Program-made: the position numbers and the translations under genes
Shown: positions 9,275 through 56,735 of the stretch, in pieces
Layout: every line of letters starts with the position of its first letter
Position numbering within the stretch: the first letter of the stretch is position 1
IMG/VR virus record: IMGVR_UViG_3300046616_000314
Location: 1 to 64,000 of that record
Length of the DNA: 64,000 nt
Direction: 5' to 3' (one strand)
The notes under the pieces: generated by a model
Told to the model about the DNA's origin: nothing
Databases searched by the model: none
What the model saw: the letters and a program-made list of their open reading frames with translations, nothing else

Positions 9275-9463
9275 GATCACGTCGTCAAAATTTTCAAAAA
9301 TTAAATCGCTGTAGCCGTTGCGTAAGGCGTCACTCAGTTCGTGTCGTTCAAGCCAGTTGACTACGGGTCTATACAAATGAAGACCGACCACGAAAAGTGG
9401 ATCGGTCTTCATGCTAGGCTCATAAAGCCAAATACTATCCCATCTTCCGATTACGGATTCCAT
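9230..9463 (-). CDS. FKLKW-family protein (late promoter)
   Basis: VVNWL; FENFDDVILFRFAF; TAAATA 5 nt before the ATG. Confidence 0.7.
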   Translation of the reverse strand: MESVIGRWDSIWLYEPSMKTDPLFVVGLHLYRPVVNWLERHELSDALRNGYSDLIFENFDDVILFRFAFASTIRLWD

Positions 9464-11464: not shown

Positions 11465-11715
11465 GCTTTCTTCCCCATCGTTGGAATCACGGCGGGGTCA
11501 AGCATTTTCAATTGAAAATATACGCCGTCTTCATCGTTCGGGAAGGTCGCGATGCATTCCTTGCTCTCGTACACGTACGACAACTTCACGTCCCGAAAGC
11601 CATCGGTCAGATTGTCGCGCATCCAATTTTTCAATCGGTAGCTGAAATCCAACACGTATGCTTGGGTATAATTGTCAGGGATGACGCATTTAAAAGCCAT
11701 CCCTGACATTACCAA
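11458..11715 (-). CDS. FKLKW-family protein
   Basis: KNWM; FPNDEDGVYFQLKM. Confidence 0.75.
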   Translation of the reverse strand: MVMSGMAFKCVIPDNYTQAYVLDFSYRLKNWMRDNLTDGFRDVKLSYVYESKECIATFPNDEDGVYFQLKMLDPAVIPTMGKKAW

Positions 11716-20689: not shown

Positions 20690-20775
20690 CGAAAATAGTT
20701 AATTTAAATATTGTAATTGAGCCGTTAACCACGTTAATGTGAGGGATAAATATTTCTCACATTAACGTATTTTAA

Positions 20776-23522: not shown

Positions 23523-23563
23523 CTAAGCCCCGTAAGCAAACAAAACACGCTTACGGGGCTTAG
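23523..23563. terminator. perfect 15-bp inverted repeat (terminator or processing hairpin)
   Basis: CTAAGCCCCGTAAGC-N11-GCTTACGGGGCTTAG just after the stop codon. Confidence 0.7.
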
Positions 23564-27934: not shown

Positions 27935-28107
27935 GAAAATTTATCGCAAATGTCGTTGGTCTGTGTGCCCTGGCTTGCGTGGGAACCCTGGACTATTTTT
28001 GGTTCAAGCAAGTCGGCGCCGAAGGGCTCGTTAATATCGCCATCGTGACCGCCTTGGCTCTTATGGTGATTTGGAACGTCGTCAGTGACCACAAAAAACA
28101 AGTATAG
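27931..28107 (+). CDS. 58-aa two-TM peptide
   Basis: MRKFIANVVGLCALACVG... (manual translation); ATGA overlap. Confidence 0.55.
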   Translation: MRKFIANVVGLCALACVGTLDYFWFKQVGAEGLVNIAIVTALALMVIWNVVSDHKKQV

Positions 28108-28453
28108 GTTCATCAATCTCTTGGATATTACCAAGCGTAGTGGTGAAATTCACTACACCACGTTCAAGATGATTCCGAACGCTTACCGTTTCAAGTCGAA
28201 CGGGACAAGCGCGGAAATCAATGAACGTATGATCGCCATGGCGGCGTACTGTCGCAAGTTTGAATGCCGATGGGCTTTCTCTCGCGAACAGGAAGAAGGC
28301 AGCACATATACGTTTGCACATATCCGTATGGCGTTGGCTCGTAAGGCTGGCGTCCCGTATGTGCCGCCAAAGACTGATTGGCTATTCTTCGCTTTCGACA
28401 ACGAAGATTATGCCGCGCAATTCAAGCTGCGATTCAGTGATTGGCTTGAATAA
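28085..28453 (+). CDS. FKLKW-family protein
   Basis: AAYC...RW; FDNEDYAAQFKLRFS. Confidence 0.8.
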   Translation: MTTKNKYRFINLLDITKRSGEIHYTTFKMIPNAYRFKSNGTSAEINERMIAMAAYCRKFECRWAFSREQEEGSTYTFAHIRMALARKAGVPYVPPKTDWLFFAFDNEDYAAQFKLRFSDWLE

Positions 28454-28738
28454 TTACTGAACGTATTTCGACAGTTTGAACATCATAGCATTGTCTTCAC
28501 CGACAACAACGATGCCGCGATCAACTTCCTCGCCAAGATCATATCGGCTACCGCTCTTAACGAGCCAACGATTGCCGCCGTAGTACCAATCGTTGCCGCA
28601 AAGATTTTCGAGGAATTCTTCGTGCGGATATACTGTACTGCAATCCCACCGATAGTCTCGGACCCACGACGTATCCATCAAAAAGATGAAGCGTTCACCT
28701 TCTTGCTTATGGAATACGATCTGTTTGGGAGACGCCAT
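28454..28738 (-). CDS. FKLKW-family protein
   Basis: FLENLCGNDW; GEDNAMMFKLSKY. Confidence 0.7.
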   Translation of the reverse strand: MASPKQIVFHKQEGERFIFLMDTSWVRDYRWDCSTVYPHEEFLENLCGNDWYYGGNRWLVKSGSRYDLGEEVDRGIVVVGEDNAMMFKLSKYVQ

Positions 28739-28968
28739 GGGATATCCTTTCAATCAATACTGAAGAATACCACATTTATGCTTGATGTCAAATCTGAACG
28801 AAATTTCATCAAACACGGTTAAAAAATGTACGACGAGATTATTGACATCGGTATAGGGACACCCTATATATACATCATCAGGGAATGAGTGGTGTTCCCG
28901 TTAGTAAATTCTAAGAAGTCATTTGACGCACTACTTTTTGTGTAAAAATAAGAAAGTTACCTCCCTAA

Positions 28969-29499
28969 ATGAAGTCTCTCGCTATTGCCGCTCTCGCGGC
29001 TCTTTCTGTTGCCGCTGTTGCGGCTCCTGCCCTGGCTGCTACCGATTACGTTCAAGCGCAAGCTGGCGTCGGTTTCCAAGCCAACCGTGATAACGGTGAA
29101 GCCTATTCGGTCGCGGTCGGTCACGATTTCGGCACTGTCCGTGCTGAAGCCGAAGTGGTTGCTCTGCGCGGTCTGAACGACCCGAAGTTGGGTGATACCC
29201 AATCGAATCTGGCAAACATCAACGTGTACGTTGAGCCGGTCACTGTCTACGGCGTCACCCCGTTCGTCGGTGCTGGCGTTGGCTACGGTTCGCTGTTCGA
29301 CCGTGGTGTCAAGGGCGACCGTAATGGCGTCGTGTTCAACGCTTCGGCTGGTGCGACTTACCCGCTGACTGACAAGCTGACGCTGGTCGGTACTGCGCGT
29401 TATTTCATCGCCAACGACGTTGATTACGTCAAGACGCGCGGCACGCTGGACAACTACAAGGCTTCGGCTCTGACCGTTGGTCTCCGTTACAACTTCTAA
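28969..29499 (+). CDS. 8-stranded outer-membrane beta-barrel protein (OmpA-TM/Ail/Lom-like)
   Basis: Sec signal peptide ending ALA, TPFVGAGVGY, alternating beta strands and C-terminal GLRYNF BAM signal. Confidence 0.9.
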   Translation: MKSLAIAALAALSVAAVAAPALAATDYVQAQAGVGFQANRDNGEAYSVAVGHDFGTVRAEAEVVALRGLNDPKLGDTQSNLANINVYVEPVTVYGVTPFVGAGVGYGSLFDRGVKGDRNGVVFNASAGATYPLTDKLTLVGTARYFIANDVDYVKTRGTLDNYKASALTVGLRYNF

Positions 29500-29524
29500 T
29501 TCGTCTCCGAATTAGGACCAAGAG

Positions 29525-29556
29525 AAGCGGGGCAGAAATGTCCCGCTTTTTTGTTT
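29525..29556 (+). terminator. intrinsic terminator
   Basis: AAGCGGGGCA-GAAA-TGTCCCGCTT followed by a T-run. Confidence 0.8.
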
Positions 29557-29612
29557 TATTGACAGGAAACTCTTAAATAAGTAAAGTGGAAATTCAATAG
29601 GAGAAAAAGGTT

Positions 29613-29861
29613 ATGAAGTCCAAAATTCCCAAGTCTAGAAATCCTGTGGCGAAAGCTCTGCGGTCTCCGCATCTGGCTCCCAAATCGTTTACCGCCCAAA
29701 AGGGCAAGGGAAGTTATTCCCGCAAGAGCCGGAATGGTGAAAAGCCTTCCGGCTCTTATCATATCTGGGTCCAGTCAAATTTTTGGATGCCATGGGCTTC
29801 GTATATGTCCCGAACCGTAATGATCACGCCATTGTCTTTCGTAACCCATTTCGGATTGTAA
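29613..29861 (+). CDS. arfA: alternative ribosome rescue factor A
   Basis: RNPVAKAL...KGKGSYSRK signature, own TTGACA-N17-TAAAGT promoter at 29559, AGGAG SD. Confidence 0.8.
   Translation: MKSKIPKSRNPVAKALRSPHLAPKSFTAQKGKGSYSRKSRNGEKPSGSYHIWVQSNFWMPWASYMSRTVMITPLSFVTHFGL
29724..29757. terminator. hairpin inside arfA (non-stop mRNA generator and/or terminator for the convergent gene)
   Basis: AAGAGCCGGAA-N12-TTCCGGCTCTT perfect 11-bp arms starting at the end of the KGKGSYSRK codons. Confidence 0.75.
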
Positions 29862-30181
29862 TAAGATTTCGTGAACCAGTCATAGACAGCCGGGCGCATC
29901 GCCGCATTGTCTTGGCTCACATGGGTAAATCCTGGCGCGGCGATTCTGTTGAACGGGATGAAGACAGAAATAGCGGGGCTTTTGTCCTCAAGAGAAAAAG
30001 CATCAAATTTTAATTTAAGCAGAGCAACGTCTTGATCGCTCTCGACGTAAAACAAGCAAGTCATCGTGTGGATATCAAAGCCCACGAATTCCACCAGATC
30101 GACACAGTTTTCCGAGAACCATCCGCGTTGGATGTTGCTGAGTTTGGCTTCACTGATGCCGTAATAGGGAAATGGTGTCAT
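29759..30181 (-). CDS. FKLKW-family protein with internal motif and second partial domain
   Basis: GWFSENC...VESDQDVALLKLKF, followed by AVYDWF. Confidence 0.7.
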   Translation of the reverse strand: MTPFPYYGISEAKLSNIQRGWFSENCVDLVEFVGFDIHTMTCLFYVESDQDVALLKLKFDAFSLEDKSPAISVFIPFNRIAAPGFTHVSQDNAAMRPAVYDWFTKSYYNPKWVTKDNGVIITVRDIYEAHGIQKFDWTQI

Positions 30182-30495
30182 CCGAATTTCATCTTGAAAC
30201 TAAACGCGACATCATCGTTGATGAACGAAAACTCTATGGTATCGCTCATGACACGATAGATATCCCATGTTTGGGCATACGGTCCAGCGTTCAGTGTCAA
30301 CCATTCTTCCGTGGGATTGTTAAGGCACCATGTCATATGGACATAGGACACCTTAATAAATGGAACAGAAACAACCGAACCAAGCCAAAGCGGAATACGT
30401 CTGCTTGCTCTTGTTTTCATGGCAGTTTGGCGAGTTATGTTCGTAAGTATCACGCTCAATTGTTCATCAAGCCATGTTTGTTCGACTTTATCCAT
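30178..30495 (-). CDS. FKLKW-family protein
   Basis: EEWL...NAG; FINDDVAFSFKMKFG. Confidence 0.8.
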   Translation of the reverse strand: MDKVEQTWLDEQLSVILTNITRQTAMKTRASRRIPLWLGSVVSVPFIKVSYVHMTWCLNNPTEEWLTLNAGPYAQTWDIYRVMSDTIEFSFINDDVAFSFKMKFG

Positions 30496-30715
30496 ATTTC
30501 AAAATCGCTTTCACGCAATCCTCATCGGACTTGAATGCGATTATCGAAACATTTTCTGGTTTGAATTCCAGATAGACCCAATTGTCTTGGGTCTCATCGT
30601 TAAGCCATTTGACGATAGCAGAAGTCAGACGCCCTTCAGGACCGACGACGTTGCGCAACGCACCCGTCGAGACACCCGGTTCCAAATACCAAACACTCAC
30701 GTTGCGCCTTTCCAT
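30488..30715 (-). CDS. FKLKW-family small protein
   Basis: IVKWL; FKSDEDCVKAILKYG. Confidence 0.75.
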   Translation of the reverse strand: MERRNVSVWYLEPGVSTGALRNVVGPEGRLTSAIVKWLNDETQDNWVYLEFKPENVSIIAFKSDEDCVKAILKYG

Positions 30716-30921
30716 TTCAATTTTGCTTCGATGGCGTCATTGAGTTTTTTGAACCCGATTACGGCAACGTGCCGGTCAGCATCATAAAATTCATAGAACC
30801 AACGAGAGCCATAGTTCTCGCGGAGAAACTTACCAAGTTGCGTCACCAAATGTCCATTCCGTGTGCCACCGCTCGGAAATTCTACCAGATGAGGCGTGGC
30901 GTGCCATTTAGGACTGTTCAT
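30697..30921 (-). CDS. FKLKW-family small protein
   Basis: FLRENYGSRW; FKKLNDAIEAKLKWK. Confidence 0.75.
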   Translation of the reverse strand: MNSPKWHATPHLVEFPSGGTRNGHLVTQLGKFLRENYGSRWFYEFYDADRHVAVIGFKKLNDAIEAKLKWKGAT

Positions 30922-31205
30922 GCCCCACCCCACTTCAAGAGGAACAATGCCACGTCTTCTTCGGTGTGACAAAACACATGAAGATAATATTTTCTTTTTT
31001 CGGTAGTGTAAGACGCCACTGGTTCGATGAACGGTCCATCAACGAACATTCCAGGGTGATTTTCTAGACACCAATCGTCAATTTTATTACCCCAATTGCC
31101 CGTGAACGGATATTCACTAACCGGGCAATAGAGTTTGATGAAATACAAACCCACGCCAGGAGAGATCGGAGCCTTTCGTTTTTTGACCGTGTACCTCATA
31201 GCCAT
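30918..31205 (-). CDS. FKLKW-family small protein
   Basis: IDDWCLEN; HTEEDVALFLLKWG. Confidence 0.85.
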   Translation of the reverse strand: MAMRYTVKKRKAPISPGVGLYFIKLYCPVSEYPFTGNWGNKIDDWCLENHPGMFVDGPFIEPVASYTTEKRKYYLHVFCHTEEDVALFLLKWGGA

Positions 31206-31504
31206 TTCAACCGAAACAACACGGCGTCTTCATCCGTAGAAAAACGAATGAAAGCCCTCCGGTTAGCGTCGTCCCTTGCCCACGCGAAACACATTTCGGG
31301 AATGTCATTGAGATATTGCCGACACCATTTCCATACCCTGTACTTGGGTGTGGTCTCAATGAGAAGAGTGGGAAAGTCGCTGTAAGCATCGGCGGGAATG
31401 TTGTCCCTGCCAATCACGGAAGAAAGTTTATACACCTTATCGAACGGGAGGTTGATCCAACCCGCCCGTTCCAACTCTCGCTGAGATTTATATTCTTTAT
31501 TCAT
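31196..31504 (-). CDS. FKLKW-family small protein
   Basis: VWKWC; FSTDEDAVLFRLKWL. Confidence 0.85.
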   Translation of the reverse strand: MNKEYKSQRELERAGWINLPFDKVYKLSSVIGRDNIPADAYSDFPTLLIETTPKYRVWKWCRQYLNDIPEMCFAWARDDANRRAFIRFSTDEDAVLFRLKWL

Positions 31505-31833
31505 CAGCGTTGCGCCAGATAGTTATTCAGCAAGCCTTCGATGTTGGCTTTGCCTGCCACATTCTGACTGTGAACGTAGAATGAAAAATCATCAGGGATG
31601 AATTCACCATCCGCGCTCAAATCGACGTTCACTAACCACCACGCGAAATCATAGCCAGACTCTTCAAGGGTCTCGTCTGATTTCAAGCCAAGGTCATGAT
31701 CGAAACTGATGAACGCCGGGCATCCAAATGCGCTCACGGTGGATATGGCTTGATAAACGTTGCGCACGATTTTCCATTCCTCGCCATCGTCGGGCGGGAA
31801 ACGTTCGTCATCGATAAAAAGTTTGTAGGTCAT
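31504..31833 (-). CDS. cyclic-phosphate-processing receiver-like domain protein
   Basis: KLFIDDER, ISFDHDLG, SGYDFAWWL and VHSQNVAG motifs. Confidence 0.75.
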   Translation of the reverse strand: MTYKLFIDDERFPPDDGEEWKIVRNVYQAISTVSAFGCPAFISFDHDLGLKSDETLEESGYDFAWWLVNVDLSADGEFIPDDFSFYVHSQNVAGKANIEGLLNNYLAQR

Positions 31834-32339
31834 CGATTGGGGTCCAACAAAATTGAAACCCATTCACACACGGTATCCCAACAACCCAATTCGTCGCAGG
31901 CGTCTTTGTTCAGGACAATGAAACCCGGTTGGTATCTGCTATTGGTGTGATCGCACGCCAACCAACCAACAGTCGGTTCGTCTTCGCGATAGGAAAACAA
32001 ATCGCCCTTGTTTGCCAATTGGGTTTCGCCAGATGAGCGAAGCAGGAAATCCCCAATATGTTCTTTGATGCCGATCAGAGCCAATAGCATCGGCGGCTTA
32101 TGCGCAGTCGTTGTTTCCATGGTTTGGAAAGGATTGATCATCAAATATGTGTAGATGGCTTCTTCTTTTGCGCGTTCTTGGATATATGCAATCGCACGAT
32201 CTTTCGTGCCGAAATCATATTCGGCATAGTACATTTCATCCAACTGGCATGGGATTGCATAGCTACCACCGCTTTTCAGAGTGGCTACTTTTCTTCTCGT
32301 TTCATCAACGAGCACAATACGGTTCCAATTGGCGTACAA
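31830..32339 (-). CDS. hypothetical protein
   Basis: 169 aa, GGAGA SD. Confidence 0.7.
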   Translation of the reverse strand: MYANWNRIVLVDETRRKVATLKSGGSYAIPCQLDEMYYAEYDFGTKDRAIAYIQERAKEEAIYTYLMINPFQTMETTTAHKPPMLLALIGIKEHIGDFLLRSSGETQLANKGDLFSYREDEPTVGWLACDHTNSRYQPGFIVLNKDACDELGCWDTVCEWVSILLDPNR

Positions 32340-33460: not shown

Positions 33461-33910
33461 GTCTCGCATCATATCGCGATGACCCTGGCGACGTGCCGCA
33501 ACACGCATCCGACGCTTTGCGTGTTGCGCGGCATGGACGCGCTGTCGATAGCACGTGCCATTCCGGCGAACCATGTGATGAACTTTTTCCCACATATAAT
33601 GTAGGTCTGCGCCATCGGAATCGTAGTCGGGATTCCACTCGTAGCGGACCTTCTTGACCATCGCCGGGTAATACTCGTAGCGATAGGCTTCCTCATGGTC
33701 GCCTTCACAATTCCGAAAGACGTATGGGACTTTACGATATTTTTCTCCCATTTCCTCGTACTCAATGCGGAAGCGTACCGGTTCGGGAACTGGTGGCTTG
33801 GGAAGTTTTAGATAGTTGTAATCGGATAATTTGAAACGCCCGTCCTTGGCTTTTGCACAATGGGCATGATTATTGCGATGAAGAATCAATTTACGAATGG
33901 TGCGAGACAC
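33410..33910 (-). CDS. basic hypothetical protein (MSRTIRK...)
   Basis: GTG start with GAGGGAG SD. Confidence 0.7.
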   Translation of the reverse strand: MSRTIRKLILHRNNHAHCAKAKDGRFKLSDYNYLKLPKPPVPEPVRFRIEYEEMGEKYRKVPYVFRNCEGDHEEAYRYEYYPAMVKKVRYEWNPDYDSDGADLHYMWEKVHHMVRRNGTCYRQRVHAAQHAKRRMRVAARRQGHRDMMRDLAEFEREHHEIVGVVE

Positions 33911-34423: not shown

Positions 34424-34900
34424 ATGAAAATCAAGCTCGCACTTATTGGTGCGCTAAGCCTAGCACTTGCCGGGATCGCACATGCCGAGACCGAAAAGAG
34501 TGCTTGGCAATTTCGCACTCCCGCTGAAACTTCTGTAGCGCAAAACAGCGTTGTTTTGATGCAGCAGAAGCAGAACGACTACTACAAGATGTACAAGAAT
34601 GGCGGCTCTGGCGTCATTGGCGGCGGAAGTGGTCTGTTCGGTTCGTCAACTTCGGCGACCAACAACTTCACGCAAATCGTCAACCAGAACACCACCAACA
34701 ACAACTGTTCTGCAACGGGCGCCGGATCGGCTCTGACGTGTGGTTCGTCTTCTACCAATACGAACAACGTCAATCAGACGACCACGGACTCGACCGCTGA
34801 TGCGAACAACACCATCACCGGTAACACCATCACGAACCAGCCCTCGACCACGACGAATTCGGGCAACACCGGTTCGACGGTAACTGGGGGCAACCAATGA
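34424..34900 (+). CDS. secreted N/T/S/G-rich HfaA/curlin-like protein
   Basis: Signal peptide ending AHA; GSSTSATNNFTQIVNQ...NSGN low-complexity region; first gene of the operon before the CsgG/HfaB homolog. Confidence 0.65.
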   Translation: MKIKLALIGALSLALAGIAHAETEKSAWQFRTPAETSVAQNSVVLMQQKQNDYYKMYKNGGSGVIGGGSGLFGSSTSATNNFTQIVNQNTTNNNCSATGAGSALTCGSSSTNTNNVNQTTTDSTADANNTITGNTITNQPSTTTNSGNTGSTVTGGNQ

Positions 34901-35889
34901 ACAAGCGTAACCTTTTCCTGACCGTCGCTCTTATGATGTCGATGGCAATTCCTGCCGTGGCTTCCGCCGGAAGCAAGAAGGCAGTCAACCCGATGAACCC
35001 ACGCAATGCGATGGTTCTGGGATCGGCGCCGGAAAACAACGTGACCGCGACTCAAAACGGTTTCGTCTGTTTCGCCAACTACCTCGCCAAGGACCCGCGC
35101 CGCCCGGTCTTCTCGGTTGGTCGCCTGCGCGATGACTCGGGAAAGTTTTCGAATTTCGCCAATGAGCCGGGTTCGGCTGGCGGCTACGAAATGACCCAAG
35201 GTCTGTCCAACATGGTCTATACGGCTCTGGGCAAGCTGGCTCCTGACTTCGCCATCGTTGAGCGCACGGATACCGCAATCGTGGACTCCGAAATCTCGCT
35301 CGCCAAGGAAAGCCTGTTGGGCGATCCTTCGGAGCAAGGCACGTGGGCTGTCGATAAGAACGGGCAAAAGATTTTGCTCGGCAAAGGTCTTCGGTCCTTG
35401 ACCGGCGGTCAATTCCAGGGTGTTGATTACTACATCACTGGTGCGATCACCGAAATCAACTACAACATTTCGTCGGGCGGCGCCCAACTCAAGGTTCAAG
35501 GGATCGGCGGCGGCAATCGCGTCTATTCCATGAGCATTGCGATGGACCTTCGCATCGTGGATGCCCGCACGCTCCGCGTGGTCAAGACCGTCTCTGAACG
35601 GAAGAAGATCAGCGGTAATGAAACCGAATTTGGTGTCTTTAATTTCCTCGGAGATTATCTGATCGACATCAATGCGGGTCGTAAGCTTCAAGAGCCCATT
35701 CAACTGGGCGTGCGAGCGACTATGGAATCAGCCCTACTCAAGTTGGTCGGGGCTGCATATGGCACGAATTACGGGGAAACTTGTAGCTCGTATGCCGCCA
35801 CTACCTACGGTCAAGTTGTGCCTGTCACGACTCCCGTAGCCGACAACACGGCTGATCCCATCGCGGATAAGCTGTCGGCGTCGAAGTAA
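34897..35889 (+). CDS. hfaB: CsgG/HfaB-family secretion pore protein
   Basis: VGRLRDDSGK, TQG..MVYTALGK, IVERTD, DYYITGAITEINYN, MDLRIVDARTL and EPIQLGVRA motifs. Confidence 0.85.
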   Translation: MNKRNLFLTVALMMSMAIPAVASAGSKKAVNPMNPRNAMVLGSAPENNVTATQNGFVCFANYLAKDPRRPVFSVGRLRDDSGKFSNFANEPGSAGGYEMTQGLSNMVYTALGKLAPDFAIVERTDTAIVDSEISLAKESLLGDPSEQGTWAVDKNGQKILLGKGLRSLTGGQFQGVDYYITGAITEINYNISSGGAQLKVQGIGGGNRVYSMSIAMDLRIVDARTLRVVKTVSERKKISGNETEFGVFNFLGDYLIDINAGRKLQEPIQLGVRATMESALLKLVGAAYGTNYGETCSSYAATTYGQVVPVTTPVADNTADPIADKLSASK

Positions 35890-36841: not shown

Positions 36842-36877
36842 AAGAGGGTAGGGGAGAAATCTCCTACCCTCTTTTTT
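36842..36877 (+). terminator. intrinsic terminator of the hfa-like operon
   Basis: AAGAGGGTAGG...CCTACCCTCTT followed by a T-run. Confidence 0.8.
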
Positions 36878-54995: not shown

Positions 54996-56735
54996 ATGAC
55001 AAAGAAAGTCAATGAAAGCGTTGCTTTCTTAATTGAAAGCGAACTTGAAAAGATGCAAGTCGTGCTTGCTGTTAAGAGCATCGCTGACAAGCTACAAGAC
55101 ATCGCGAAGACCCTCGCCAAGATCGAAGTCGATGACATCATGCCTATCCTCGATAGTATGCGTGTTGAATTCGGTCCTGAAGTTGCTGATCACTTCAACG
55201 AAGCGACCACAAGCAAGATTCGCGAAACCACAGAAGCCATTCAGGCTGCTAAGAACGCCATCACCACCGAAGCTGAACGCCTGGAATCGGGCGCACCCGT
55301 GAACGATATGTCCATGGATAGCGGCATGGGCGATGACGACATGGCTTCGATGGGTGATGAAACTGGTATGGAAGACCCGGCTATGGCTGGTGGCGACGAC
55401 ACCATTGCTCCCGATGCTGCTATGGGCGACGACATGGGCATGGGCGGCGAAGACGATCTGGACGCTGGCTTTGAAGACCCGGCTGCATCTGGTGCGGCTC
55501 AAGGTCGTGCTCGCAAGGAAAGCATTGCCTATTCGGCAAAGGCTCTGCGCGAATCTTCGAACCCTGACCAACTGGTTTATCAAGCATTCTTCGCTAAGCT
55601 GAAGGAAAGCAAGTCGGCTGCTACGGCTGTCAAGGCTGTTGCCGAAGCTTTCTCCATCGACGCCATTGACGTTGTTGAAATCGTCCAAGAGGGTAACACT
55701 TGGAAGGATAACTTCGAAAAGGGTAAGAAGGACAAGCTAGACAAGCGTTCTAAGGATCGTGCCGATTCGAAGAAGAAGAAAGAAATCGAAGAAGGCAAGT
55801 CACACAAGAAGAACGACGAAGATAGCGAAGACAAGTTCGCTAAGTTCAAGAAGCGTTCTGCCGAGCGTGACGCCAAGCCGAAGAAGGTTGAAGAGACTGC
55901 CGCTGTAAAGCTGGCGCCTCACGCCAAGACTGCTGGCAACGTTGCAAAGCCGAAGGTTGTTGGTAAAGTAAAGCCGAAAGCGTCTTTTAAGACCGGCGGC
56001 ACTACGGGTAAGCCGAGTAGTGCAGTCACTAAGACAGTGAAGGAAGACTTCGGAATGCGTGGCGTTCCGAAGTCTGACGCAACCCAGAGCCTTAGCCAAT
56101 TTCAGGTTAAGGTTCTGGATATGCCTACTGTCCAAGACGCTAAAGAACGTGCAAGAGCCGATTATTCGGAGAAGCGCGGTCGCACAATCCAAGTTCCGTA
56201 TTTGTTTGTTTTGAATTCGGAGCAAAATGGTGAGCAATACAATTCACGCGCGGCTGATCCGTTCGTTGTTCGTATTGAGCCTACCGATGATCATTTCTTG
56301 ACTGGTATTTGGGACGGTAACGTTCTGACCCCGCGTTGGAAGATCGTTGTGAAGGATGGCAAGGGTATCGTCCCCGCCAATGCTCGTATTGCCTGGATTG
56401 ATGCCCGTGGTTATCGCGTTCAGAAAAAGCCTAAGCTAGGTGAAGATCATAACGTTGTTGGTATTCTACCTGCGCAATTGGATCGTGCCATCGAAGCCGG
56501 TGATATCGAAACCGCGAAGCGTTTGTTGAATAAAGTGCTTACGGATATCGAAAAAGACCCGGAATCGCGTACCGCGACGATTGCTATGCTGGTTAAGTTG
56601 ATGACCAATGAGAAAAACAAAGGCATCAAGGAAGCCATGGTTGACTATCTAAGCAACGCCGAAAAGCGTTCTGAGAAAGCCAAGGCGGCTCGTGCTGCTA
56701 AAGGTTTCACCGCCATGGATCAGAAAAAGAAGTAA
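54996..56735 (+). CDS. prohead scaffold/core-like protein
   Basis: Coiled-coil N-terminus, D/M/G-rich linker and repeated xES/xEG/xED sites. Confidence 0.7.
   Translation: MTKKVNESVAFLIESELEKMQVVLAVKSIADKLQDIAKTLAKIEVDDIMPILDSMRVEFGPEVADHFNEATTSKIRETTEAIQAAKNAITTEAERLESGAPVNDMSMDSGMGDDDMASMGDETGMEDPAMAGGDDTIAPDAAMGDDMGMGGEDDLDAGFEDPAASGAAQGRARKESIAYSAKALRESSNPDQLVYQAFFAKLKESKSAATAVKAVAEAFSIDAIDVVEIVQEGNTWKDNFEKGKKDKLDKRSKDRADSKKKKEIEEGKSHKKNDEDSEDKFAKFKKRSAERDAKPKKVEETAAVKLAPHAKTAGNVAKPKVVGKVKPKASFKTGGTTGKPSSAVTKTVKEDFGMRGVPKSDATQSLSQFQVKVLDMPTVQDAKERARADYSEKRGRTIQVPYLFVLNSEQNGEQYNSRAADPFVVRIEPTDDHFLTGIWDGNVLTPRWKIVVKDGKGIVPANARIAWIDARGYRVQKKPKLGEDHNVVGILPAQLDRAIEAGDIETAKRLLNKVLTDIEKDPESRTATIAMLVKLMTNEKNKGIKEAMVDYLSNAEKRSEKAKAARAAKGFTAMDQKKK

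What the first reader, a model, noticed from the sequence alone, without database searches (positions are those of the whole stretch)
29559..29861. Phage ArfA with an internal hairpin: a sensor of tmRNA failure
Seen: the ArfA signature runs directly into an 11-bp-arm hairpin (29724-29757) about 100 nt before the stop. The distal reading frame overlaps a convergent gene and looks non-functional. Established: bacterial arfA is expressed from a truncated non-stop mRNA, so the protein is tagged and destroyed by trans-translation unless tmRNA is limiting. Inference: the phage keeps this feedback to rescue ribosomes when tmRNA is overloaded or when defence nucleases cleave mRNA or tRNA.
Basis: partly seen in the sequence, partly recalled or inferred. 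Interest (0 to 1): 0.7.

Follow-up and report, generated by a model that had tools for sequence, protein, structure and literature searches.

The report
Jumbo-phage ArfA gene with in-frame hairpin
A 561-kb soil phage carries a small gene related to the bacterial ribosome-rescue factor ArfA, with the same hairpin-before-the-stop-codon layout that bacteria use to make ArfA only when the main rescue system (tmRNA) is overloaded. This is a credible new example of a known design, not a new kind of system.

Summary
ORF 29613-29861 (+) encodes 82 aa. Residues 10-38 carry the ArfA core, including KGKGSYSRK. A perfect 11-bp hairpin (29724-29757, -24.4 kcal/mol) begins at codon 38, and the stop codon lies 102 nt further on. 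The distal 33 codons are hydrophobic and antisense to a convergent ORF.

The single sequence scores just under Pfam's ArfA cut-off (22-23 vs 25.5 bits). A profile of it and 28 relatives matches E. coli ArfA at E=1e-8, gapless over 44 residues.

The window is the first 64 kb of a 561-kb jumbo phage from a rhizosphere metagenome, nearest to Agrobacterium phage Atu_ph07.

Divergent homologues carry a hairpin at the same codon position, with different arm sequences and compensatory changes. These include Atu_ph07, several metagenomic copies and chromosomal copies in Alphaproteobacteria. Their downstream genes are co-directional, so the hairpin belongs to the gene. Most phage copies (e.g. Caulobacter phage Cr30) instead end at an ordinary stop.

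ArfA has already been annotated in two phages, without any note of this regulation. No RNA data exist here, so truncation of the mRNA, tmRNA control and RF2 recruitment are inferred.

Verdict: new member of a known kind, moderate interest.

The parts
29521..29552 (+). Canonical intrinsic terminator (stem plus U-tract) of the upstream outer-membrane beta-barrel gene (28969-29499). It marks the 5' boundary of the arfA-like unit.
   Evidence: terminator scan; PF13505 match for the upstream ORF.
29559..29587 (+). Sigma-70-like promoter, TTGACA-17 nt-TAAAGT (10 of 12 matches).
   Evidence: This is a consensus match only; 1.5 such sites are expected by chance in this 1.6-kb region.
29600..29604 (+). 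Shine-Dalgarno AGGAG, 8 nt upstream of the ATG.
   Evidence: Read directly from the sequence.
29613..29861 (+). Full open frame of the arfA-like gene, 82 codons plus stop.
   Evidence: It is the only copy in the 561-kb genome.
29640..29726 (+). ArfA core (N10-K38): NPVAKALRSPHL...KGKGSYSRK. It aligns without gaps to E. coli ArfA residues 14-42.
29724..29757 (+). In-frame hairpin with 11-bp perfect arms and a 12-nt loop that holds 3 further pairs. No U-tract follows on either strand. It is the predicted site of mRNA 3'-end formation.
   Evidence: Homologous hairpins in relatives.
29613..29759 (+). Predicted active product if the mRNA ends at the hairpin: about 48-50 aa, 13 K/R, GRAVY -1.27.
   Evidence: The length is comparable to E. 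coli ArfA 1-55 and to natural stop-type homologues. The product itself is an inference.
29760..29861 (+). Distal frame (codons 50-82): hydrophobic (GRAVY +0.43), 1 K/R, antisense to the convergent ORF. Probably not part of the functional protein.
   Evidence: No homologue shares this tail.
29759..30181 (-). Convergent ORF, 140 aa, the last gene of a minus-strand array of small paralogues. Its TGA stop lies 1 nt from the hairpin.
   Evidence: Only the N-terminal half shows the paralogue motif, and no homologues exist outside this genome.

Best explanation
This is a phage-borne member of the ArfA family of small, basic ribosome-rescue peptides.

**Proposed mechanism (inferred steps marked)**
1. 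A host-type promoter drives a short transcript.
2. (Inferred) The transcript ends at or in the hairpin at 29724-29757. The cause could be pausing or termination, an endonuclease cut, or 3'-exonuclease trimming back to the stem. The resulting mRNA has no stop codon.
3. (Inferred) Ribosomes reach the 3' end carrying a peptide of about 48-50 residues. While host tmRNA-SmpB is available, the peptide is tagged and degraded.
4. (Inferred) When trans-translation is saturated, as expected during infection with heavy mRNA turnover, the untagged peptide accumulates.
5. (Inferred) Its basic tail (KGKGSYSRK...) probes the empty mRNA channel of other non-stop ribosomes. It recruits a class-I release factor (RF2 in the known cases) to release the nascent chain, which keeps ribosomes available for phage protein synthesis.

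**Shown here:** homology, the hairpin, its position, its conservation in relatives, and the composition of the distal tail.
**Inferred:** the mRNA 3' end, tmRNA control, RF2 recruitment and the benefit to the phage.
For: **Homology**
- The only PDB matches up to E = 10 are four ArfA chains, gapless over residues 10-44.
- A profile of 29 family members matches six ArfA chains at E = 1e-8 to 1e-7.
- 21 of 29 members match Pfam ArfA, best E = 8.8e-9. The Cr30 copy scores 27.2 bits against the 25.5 cut-off.

**Hairpin is real and gene-specific**
- establish the hairpin, its stability, its rarity and its uniqueness in the genome.
- A stable hairpin starts 2-5 codons after the YxRK motif, well before the stop, in Atu_ph07 (12 bp), L016/L017 (13 bp, U-rich tail), L019 (10 bp) and L020 (13 bp, U tail).
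- The same holds for L025/L027/L030, L041 and L065.
- Chromosomal alphaproteobacterial copies L105/L106 and L117/L120 carry terminator-like hairpins inside the ORF.
- Arm sequences differ between lineages. The outer stem shows compensatory pairs among the window, L016, L017 and Atu_ph07.
- The downstream genes of these homologues are co-directional.

**Enrichment**
- In 13 of 84 distinct loci, the 70 nt after the Y codon fold in the most stable 5% of their own locus (binomial P = 2.7e-4).
- For loci with tails of 14 aa or more, the count is 11 of 55 (P = 7.5e-5).

**Parallel with E. coli arfA**
- Basic N-terminal part versus hydrophobic distal tail: GRAVY -1.27 / +0.43 here, -1.45 / +0.47 in E. 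coli.
- E. coli arfA also has an in-ORF hairpin and overlaps a convergent gene, mscL.

**Established biology and dependence on the host**
- The regulatory logic of arfA and brfA is described in PMC8012679.
- The phage has no tmRNA, SmpB or RNase III of its own, so any feedback would read the host's trans-translation capacity.
Against: - The single sequence is below Pfam's ArfA gathering score (22.1-22.9 vs 25.5 bits).
- The hairpin lacks a U-tract on either strand, whereas the neighbouring gene uses a canonical terminator. Its 11+3 bp stem is shorter than the roughly 22-bp RNase III substrate of E. coli arfA.
- The hairpin abuts the stop codon of a convergent operon and could serve that operon.
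- Most phage homologues have ordinary stops and no hairpin, so the feedback is dispensable for phage ArfA in general.
- No RNA run was listed.
- The host is unknown. ArfA was reported absent from 2,376 Alphaproteobacteria (PMC11633108), so compatibility with host RF2 is untested.
- A close relative's contig has a T>C change at 29747 that removes the top pair of the stem.
Confidence: 0.55

Rival explanations
1. The gene is an ArfA homologue, but the hairpin is only a shared 3'-end stabiliser or weak bidirectional terminator between two convergent units. On this reading the peptide is made constitutively, either as the 82-aa form or as a truncated form released by other rescue routes, with no meaningful tmRNA feedback.
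For: - The hairpin lies 1 nt from the stop of the convergent ORF.
- No U-tract follows it.
- Most phage copies are constitutive stop-type genes.
- The + frame stays open downstream simply because its third codon positions coincide with those of the minus-strand ORF.
Against: - Homologues with co-directional downstream genes keep a hairpin at the same codon position, several with the same TTCCGGC core and compensatory outer pairs.
- The distal tail is hydrophobic, lacks charge and is not shared with any homologue.
- The hairpin is unique in the genome, not a generic terminator element.
Confidence: 0.22
2. The peptide is ArfA-derived but has been repurposed. It would bind the empty mRNA channel without productive release, for example to compete with tmRNA-SmpB so that phage products made from truncated mRNAs escape tagging, to block host ribosome rescue, or to counter a defence system.
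For: - The N-terminal half (RNPVAKALRSPHL) differs from E. coli ArfA in the region that contacts RF2.
- Many relatives fall in a separate Pfam family of unknown function, DUF7230.
- Likely hosts are Alphaproteobacteria, where canonical ArfA was not found in a large survey.
- In Cr30 the gene lies two genes from an RNA ligase.
Against: - The alignment to E. coli ArfA is gapless across both the RF2-contacting and the channel-binding parts.
- Chromosomal alphaproteobacterial copies carry the classical non-stop design, as expected of genuine back-up rescue factors.
- Nothing found here points specifically to inhibition.
Confidence: 0.13
3. The ORF is not expressed, and the ArfA-like motif is a chance match in a small lysine/arginine-rich frame.
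For: - The sequence is short and low in complexity.
- The single-sequence E-values are weak.
Against: - Promoter, Shine-Dalgarno sequence and an upstream terminator frame the unit.
- More than 173 viral contigs and 19 metagenomic protein clusters share the same 30-residue core.
- The profile match to ArfA is E = 1e-8.
- The pelagiphage homologue is transcribed (PMC12753301).
Confidence: 0.03

Closest known systems
E. coli ArfA (YhdL; Pfam PF03889) and its non-stop, tmRNA-controlled expression
   Same: - A small basic peptide with the KGKGSYxRK motif at the same spacing from the conserved N/P residues (gapless alignment).
- A stem-loop inside the ORF upstream of the stop.
- A hydrophobic, unconserved distal tail.
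- Overlap with a convergent gene.
   Different: - It is encoded by a jumbo phage.
- The hairpin starts 3 codons after the Y, against 12 in E. coli. It is shorter (11+3 bp against about 22 bp).
- The N-terminal consensus is RNPVAKALRSPHL rather than DNAIEALLHDPLF.
- The single sequence is below Pfam's cut-off.
- The likely host class was reported to lack arfA.
B. subtilis BrfA
   Same: A small RF2-dependent rescue factor whose ORF contains a transcription stop signal before the stop codon, so that trans-translation controls its level (PMC8012679). Several relatives of the window gene (L020, L041, L065, L105/L106, L117/L120) have exactly this terminator-in-ORF form.
   Different: There is no sequence homology to BrfA. 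The window's own hairpin lacks the U-tract of a rho-independent terminator.
Phage genes already annotated as ArfA: pelagiphage HTVC027P gp30 and Citromicrobium phage RXM g10
   Same: ArfA-domain genes in phages of Alphaproteobacteria. HTVC027P gp30 is transcribed early and late in infection (PMC12753301; PMC8953757). HTVC027P appears among the tblastn matches to the family.
   Different: Those papers report annotation only, with no regulation or activity. The marine-phage copies seen here are stop-type, without an in-ORF hairpin. The window's copy is of the hairpin (non-stop) type.
Pfam DUF7230 (PF23876) and PHROGs phrog_20887, phrog_37108 and phrog_2701 (all without assigned function)
   Same: These are relatives of the window peptide. 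Copies from Atu_ph07, ORM_20, L015, P0007 and P0008 match DUF7230. Fifteen, eight and six of the 29 family members match the three PHROGs. They share the RNPVAKALR...KxxYxRK frame and align with ArfA-type members.
   Different: DUF7230 members lack the GKG insert (KKxYxRK instead of KGKGSYxRK). The window peptide has the full ArfA motif and does not match DUF7230.

Membership tests
ArfA (PF03889) | Score at or above Pfam's curated gathering threshold | tested here: not met
   The window scores 22.1 bits (82 aa) and 22.9 bits (residues 1-50), against a cut-off of 25.5. The Cr30 orthologue scores 27.2 bits and passes.
ArfA (PF03889) | Homology to experimentally characterised ArfA at profile level | tested here: met
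   The profile of alignment A1 matches six E. coli ArfA PDB chains at E = 1.1e-8 to 1.2e-7, gapless over 44 residues. With the single sequence, the only PDB hits are ArfA chains.
ArfA (PF03889) | KGKGSYxRK motif followed by a basic tail (the part that occupies the mRNA channel in solved structures) | tested here: met
   Residues 30-38 read KGKGSYSRK, followed by SRNGEK. There are 13 K/R in residues 1-49.
ArfA (PF03889) | Stem-loop inside the ORF upstream of the stop codon | tested here: met
   An 11-bp perfect hairpin at codons 38-49, 102 nt before the stop. It is conserved in position in relatives.
ArfA (PF03889) | Poorly conserved, hydrophobic C-terminal extension that is dispensable for activity | tested here: met
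   GRAVY is +0.43 for residues 50-82, against +0.47 for E. coli residues 56-72. No homologue shares the tail. Dispensability itself was not tested.
ArfA (PF03889) | mRNA truncated in vivo (RNase III cleavage or premature termination), giving a non-stop message | not testable with these tools
   No RNA run holding the sequence was listed. There is no U-tract and no phage RNase III.
ArfA (PF03889) | Product tagged by tmRNA-SmpB and degraded unless trans-translation is limiting | not testable with these tools
   The phage has no tmRNA or SmpB of its own. The host is unknown.
ArfA (PF03889) | Recruits RF2 to non-stop ribosomes and triggers peptidyl-tRNA hydrolysis | not testable with these tools
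   A pairwise fold with Caulobacter RF2 gave no verdict. The interaction forms on the ribosome.
DUF7230 (PF23876) | Match to the family profile | tested here: not met
   The window peptide has no DUF7230 hit at E <= 0.1 or E <= 0.01. Relatives (Atu_ph07 26.4 bits, L015 33.4 bits) do match.
BrfA-type terminator-in-ORF regulation | Rho-independent terminator (GC-rich stem plus U-tract) before the stop codon | tested here: not met
   The window hairpin is followed by ATCATATCTGGG and is not called by the terminator scan. The feature is met in relatives L020, L041, L065, L105/L106 and L117/L120.

The most novel reading that the evidence does not exclude
Jumbo phages of Alphaproteobacteria may bring a self-regulating ArfA into hosts that mostly lack one, and use it as an infection-stage sensor of host trans-translation capacity.

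On this reading, the peptide appears only once phage-induced mRNA decay or RNA-targeting defences have saturated tmRNA. It then keeps ribosomes free for phage protein synthesis.

It might work together with the phage's own domain-1-less, RF1-like release factor (L022 1501-2202). The distal arfA fragment might also act as an antisense RNA on the convergent gene, as arfA does on mscL in E. coli (PMC10070815).
Probability: 0.1. Interest if true: 0.75.

Novelty: new member of a known kind. Interest (0 to 1): 0.5.

Why it matters
- **Regulatory design travels with the gene.** If the inference holds, a phage has taken up both a ribosome-rescue factor and its unusual non-stop feedback. That would tie phage protein synthesis to the state of the host's trans-translation system.
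- **A common, mostly unnamed gene family.** Relatives occur in at least 173 IMG/VR contigs. They also occur in cultured phages of Caulobacter, Agrobacterium, Ochrobactrum, Erythrobacter, Roseobacter and Pelagibacter.
- **Wider bacterial distribution than reported.** ArfA-like genes with in-ORF terminators were found in about 7% of sampled alphaproteobacterial genomes. A published survey had found none in that class.
- **A tractable test system.** Agrobacterium phage Atu_ph07 carries the same hairpin-type gene.

The underlying mechanism is already known from E. coli and B. subtilis, and phage ArfA has been annotated before. The advance is one of scope, not of principle.

Tried and rejected
- **Nucleotide search of the phage collection** with 28000-32000: no match.
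- **Single-sequence search of 5.8 billion proteins:** only one relative. The exhaustive HMMER search found 19 proteins at E <= 0.001, one of them the window's own.
- **NCBIfam:** no family matches.
- **PHROGs:** no hit for the window peptide.
- **Scans of genome contigs:**
  - The single protein found nothing.
  - The narrower alignment A3 found 3 loci.
- **Scan of metagenome contigs:** only distant, mostly stop-type relatives, no close relative of the window gene.
- **Sequencing runs:** only DNA metagenomes hold the sequence, and no RNA run was listed.
- **Contigs laid from four runs:** two short fragments from relatives were recovered. All five changes in the distal region fall on third codon positions shared by both overlapping frames. 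They therefore cannot tell which frame is under selection.
- **Homologues of the convergent 140-aa ORF:** none outside this genome. That its C-terminal half is truly coding rests on weak paralogy.
- **RNAalifold on six unaligned hairpin regions:** a poor consensus, because arm lengths and loops differ. Compensatory pairs were instead read from the gapless alignment of the closest three plus Atu_ph07.
- **Pairwise fold of peptide 1-49 with Caulobacter RF2:** no verdict, score 0.02. This is evidence neither for nor against binding. Agrobacterium and Sinorhizobium RF2 references were not held.
- **tblastn with a high-GC family member** to locate phage RXM: no match.
- **Repeated genomic element:** rejected, because the hairpin is unique in 561 kb.
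- **Genome-wide stop-codon recoding:** rejected. Stop-to-stop frames of at least 100 aa cover 90% of the genome under the standard code.
- **Co-occurrence of the phage release-factor homologue with ArfA:** not supported. Atu_ph07 is not among the 25 best of 54 matching phage records, and 29 further records were not listed.

Full report
**1. What is there**

The window is the first 64 kb of a 561,116-bp IMG/VR virus record (97% complete by CheckV, 48% G+C, 36 tRNA genes). It encodes phage-type helicases, a primase, ribonucleotide reductase and a virion protein. Its nearest cultured relatives are Agrobacterium phage Atu_ph07 (52% identity in the DnaB-like helicase) and Sinorhizobium phage Phosso. 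The only run holding the sequence in full is a rhizosphere metagenome. A rhizobial or other alphaproteobacterial host is therefore likely, but this is inferred.

The locus itself has these parts:
- **Upstream boundary.** The upstream outer-membrane beta-barrel gene ends with a canonical terminator at 29521-29552.
- **Expression signals.** A TTGACA-17-TAAAGT promoter-like site follows at 29559-29587. An AGGAG lies 8 nt before the ATG at 29613.
- **ORF.** It runs to a stop at 29859-29861, giving 82 aa.
- **Hairpin.** A perfect 11-bp inverted repeat occupies 29724-29734 / 29747-29757. It folds at -24.4 kcal/mol with z = -4.15. It covers codons 38-49 and starts at the K of KGKGSYSRK.
- **Chance.** Perfect hairpins of this size occur 8 times in the window, against 0.2 in random sequence. 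This one is unique in the 561-kb genome.
- **Convergent ORF.** ORF 29759-30181 (-) places its TGA one base from the hairpin and overlaps the last 103 nt of the + frame.

**2. Is it ArfA?**

- **Single sequence.** It scores 22.1-22.9 bits on Pfam ArfA, just under the 25.5-bit cut-off.
- **PDB.** The only matches up to E = 10 are four E. coli ArfA chains. The alignment is gapless, residues 10-44 against ArfA 14-48.
- **Exhaustive HMMER search.** Eighteen further clusters of 34-74-residue peptides share RNPVAKALRSPHLxPKxVxPxKGKGSYxRK. Eleven IMG/VR loci and three cultured phages (Cr30, ORM_20, Atu_ph07) carry unannotated copies.
- **Family profile.** A profile of these 29 sequences matches six ArfA chains at E = 1e-8 to 1e-7, over 44 gapless residues.
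- **Pfam across the family.** Twenty-one of 29 members match Pfam ArfA, and nine match DUF7230, a family of unknown function. The Cr30 copy passes the ArfA cut-off at 27.2 bits.

I conclude that the gene is a divergent but genuine member of an ArfA/DUF7230 continuum. Membership by Pfam's own threshold is not met for this one sequence. Membership by profile homology and motif is met.

**3. Does the hairpin belong to the gene?**

Hairpins at the same position in relatives:
- Atu_ph07 has a 12-bp hairpin starting four codons after the Y of YDRK, 14 codons before its stop. Its downstream gene is co-directional.
- Metagenomic homologues L016 and L017 (13 bp, U-rich tails), L019 (10 bp, GAAA loop) and L020 (13 bp, U tail) have hairpins at the same place. 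All have co-directional downstream genes.
- Further viral copies (L025, L027, L030, L041, L065) also have them.
- Chromosomal copies in alphaproteobacterial MAGs (L105/L106, syntenic, and L117/L120) carry terminator-like hairpins inside the ORF.

Evidence for selection on the RNA structure:
- The window, L016, L017 and Atu_ph07 share a TTCCGGC 3'-arm core.
- Their outer stem pairs change in a compensatory way: G:C / A:T / G:C at one pair and A:T / G:C / G:C at the next.
- More distant copies use unrelated arm sequences.

Enrichment across the family:
- In 13 of 84 distinct loci, the 70 nt after the Y codon fold in the most stable 5% of their own locus (P = 2.7e-4).
- For copies whose frame continues at least 14 codons, the count is 11 of 55 (P = 7.5e-5).
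- The window's own value lies in the top 4.4%.

The hairpin is therefore a recurrent feature of a subset of the family. The majority of phage copies, including Cr30 and the abundant marine-phage forms, end with an ordinary stop 4-16 residues after the Y and have no hairpin.

**4. The distal frame**

- Residues 1-49 are strongly basic and hydrophilic (13 K/R, GRAVY -1.27). Residues 50-82 are hydrophobic with one basic residue (GRAVY +0.43).
- E. coli ArfA shows the same contrast: -1.45 for residues 1-55 and +0.47 for 56-72.
- No homologue shares the tail.
- The + frame stays open because its third codon positions coincide with those of the minus-strand ORF. For the same reason, five substitutions in a relative's contig are synonymous in both frames and cannot discriminate between them.
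- The convergent ORF is the last of an array of small paralogues. Only its N-terminal half shows the family motif, and it has no homologues elsewhere.

**5. How it most likely works**

In E. coli, arfA mRNA is cut by RNase III or terminated at an in-ORF stem-loop. The non-stop product is tagged by tmRNA and degraded unless trans-translation is limiting. The truncated peptide lacks 17-18 residues and is fully active. B. subtilis brfA achieves the same with a rho-independent terminator before the stop (PMC8012679).

By analogy, the phage transcript would end at the hairpin and yield a peptide of about 48-50 residues (Y+14). That is close to E. coli's Y+16 and within the natural length range of stop-type homologues.

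The phage has no tmRNA, SmpB or RNase III. Both the sensing and the processing would therefore rely on the host.

How the 3' end forms is the weakest link:
- There is no U-tract on either strand.
- The stem (11 + 3 bp, extendable by 4 pairs across an internal loop) is shorter than E. coli's roughly 22 bp.
- Candidate mechanisms are exonuclease trimming to the stem, cleavage of the sense-antisense duplex formed with the convergent transcript, and pausing. None could be tested.

**6. Comparison with what is known, and novelty**

- **Prior annotation.** ArfA has been annotated in Citromicrobium phage RXM (g10; PMC8953757) and in pelagiphage HTVC027P (gp30). The latter is transcribed early and late in infection (PMC12753301). 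I found no paper that describes an in-ORF hairpin or non-stop design in a phage copy.
- **PHROGs.** The family falls into three PHROGs without assigned function.
- **Spread in phages.** At least 173 IMG/VR contigs carry relatives. The cultured phages carrying them infect Alphaproteobacteria, except one Microcystis phage.
- **Spread in bacteria.** A survey reported arfA in 0 of 2,376 Alphaproteobacteria (PMC11633108). The family profile finds matches in 28 of 401 sampled genomes of the class containing a Hyphomonadaceae MAG. Some of these are prophage-independent by synteny.

This is a new member of a known kind. The new details are the phage carrier, the retained regulatory hairpin, and a wider family distribution than reported.

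**7. Limits**

There are no expression data and no host, and no close relatives are available for a formal covariation test. The pairwise fold with RF2 gave no verdict. ArfA needs an empty mRNA channel, so tRNA cleavage would not itself create a substrate.

Noticed in passing
L022 1501-2202 (G000:C1:104624-105325, outside the window): The phage encodes a class-I release-factor homologue that lacks domain 1. It has a GGQ motif and an RF1-type PxT tripeptide (PET). It also has one in-frame TGA exactly where release factors carry a conserved Trp. An HNH/NUMOD3 homing endonuclease lies beside it. The genome as a whole uses the standard code. Similar release-factor genes occur in other huge phages; Atu_ph07 is not among the 25 records listed of 54 matching.
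   Followed up: partly
window 28454-28753 (-), 29759-31504 (-); also L021 717-1088 (-): An array of overlapping small ORFs (75-140 aa) forms a paralogous family. They end in a shared D/E-D-x-x-x-hydrophobic-x-L-K-W/F motif. They have no Pfam match and no homologues outside this genome.
   Followed up: partly
window 28969-29499 (+) and 34897-35889 (+): The phage encodes an outer-membrane beta-barrel protein (PF13505, E = 1.9e-10, with a signal-peptide-like N-terminus). It also encodes a CsgG-like curli secretion-channel homologue (PF03783, E = 6e-19).
   Followed up: no
L005 2980-3108, L007 2980-3108, L008 2259-2387: In three viral contigs the ArfA-like gene has a 9-11-bp hairpin whose 3' arm contains the stop codon, with compensatory changes between contigs. 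A tRNA gene follows immediately.
   Followed up: no
L085, L088, L042, L050, L091, L036, L037; L043-L098 group: In some viral contigs the ArfA core is fused to other domains. One form has a C-terminal extension ending in a conserved GNYTKP...GGKGG..GQWSARKAQ module. In many marine-phage contigs there is an N-terminal MPGKWDGRSR...IFK module.
   Followed up: no
L105 2459-2656, L106 2432-2653, L117, L120 (bacterial genomes): Alphaproteobacterial chromosomes carry ArfA/DUF7230-like genes with terminator-like hairpins inside the ORF. Twenty-eight of 401 sampled genomes of that class match the family profile. A published survey found arfA in none of 2,376 Alphaproteobacteria.
   Followed up: partly
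window 29548-29562 / 29594-29608: A 15-nt inverted repeat (80% complementary) could pair the U-tract of the upstream terminator with the Shine-Dalgarno region of the arfA-like gene. This might mask the ribosome-binding site in read-through transcripts.
   Followed up: no
window 9377-9412, 11673-11708, 20731-20768, 23523-23563, 33497-33528, 36842-36873, 56045-56075: Seven other perfect hairpins of 11-14 bp occur in the window, against 0.2 expected by chance. Their roles were not examined.
   Followed up: no
L001 1447-1599 (Caulobacter phage Cr30) and L002 1498-1695 (Ochrobactrum phage ORM_20): Both are unannotated ArfA-like ORFs in deposited phage genomes. The Cr30 copy passes Pfam's ArfA cut-off and lies two genes upstream of an RNA ligase. 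The ORM_20 copy reads on into a convergent Rz-like spanin gene.
   Followed up: partly
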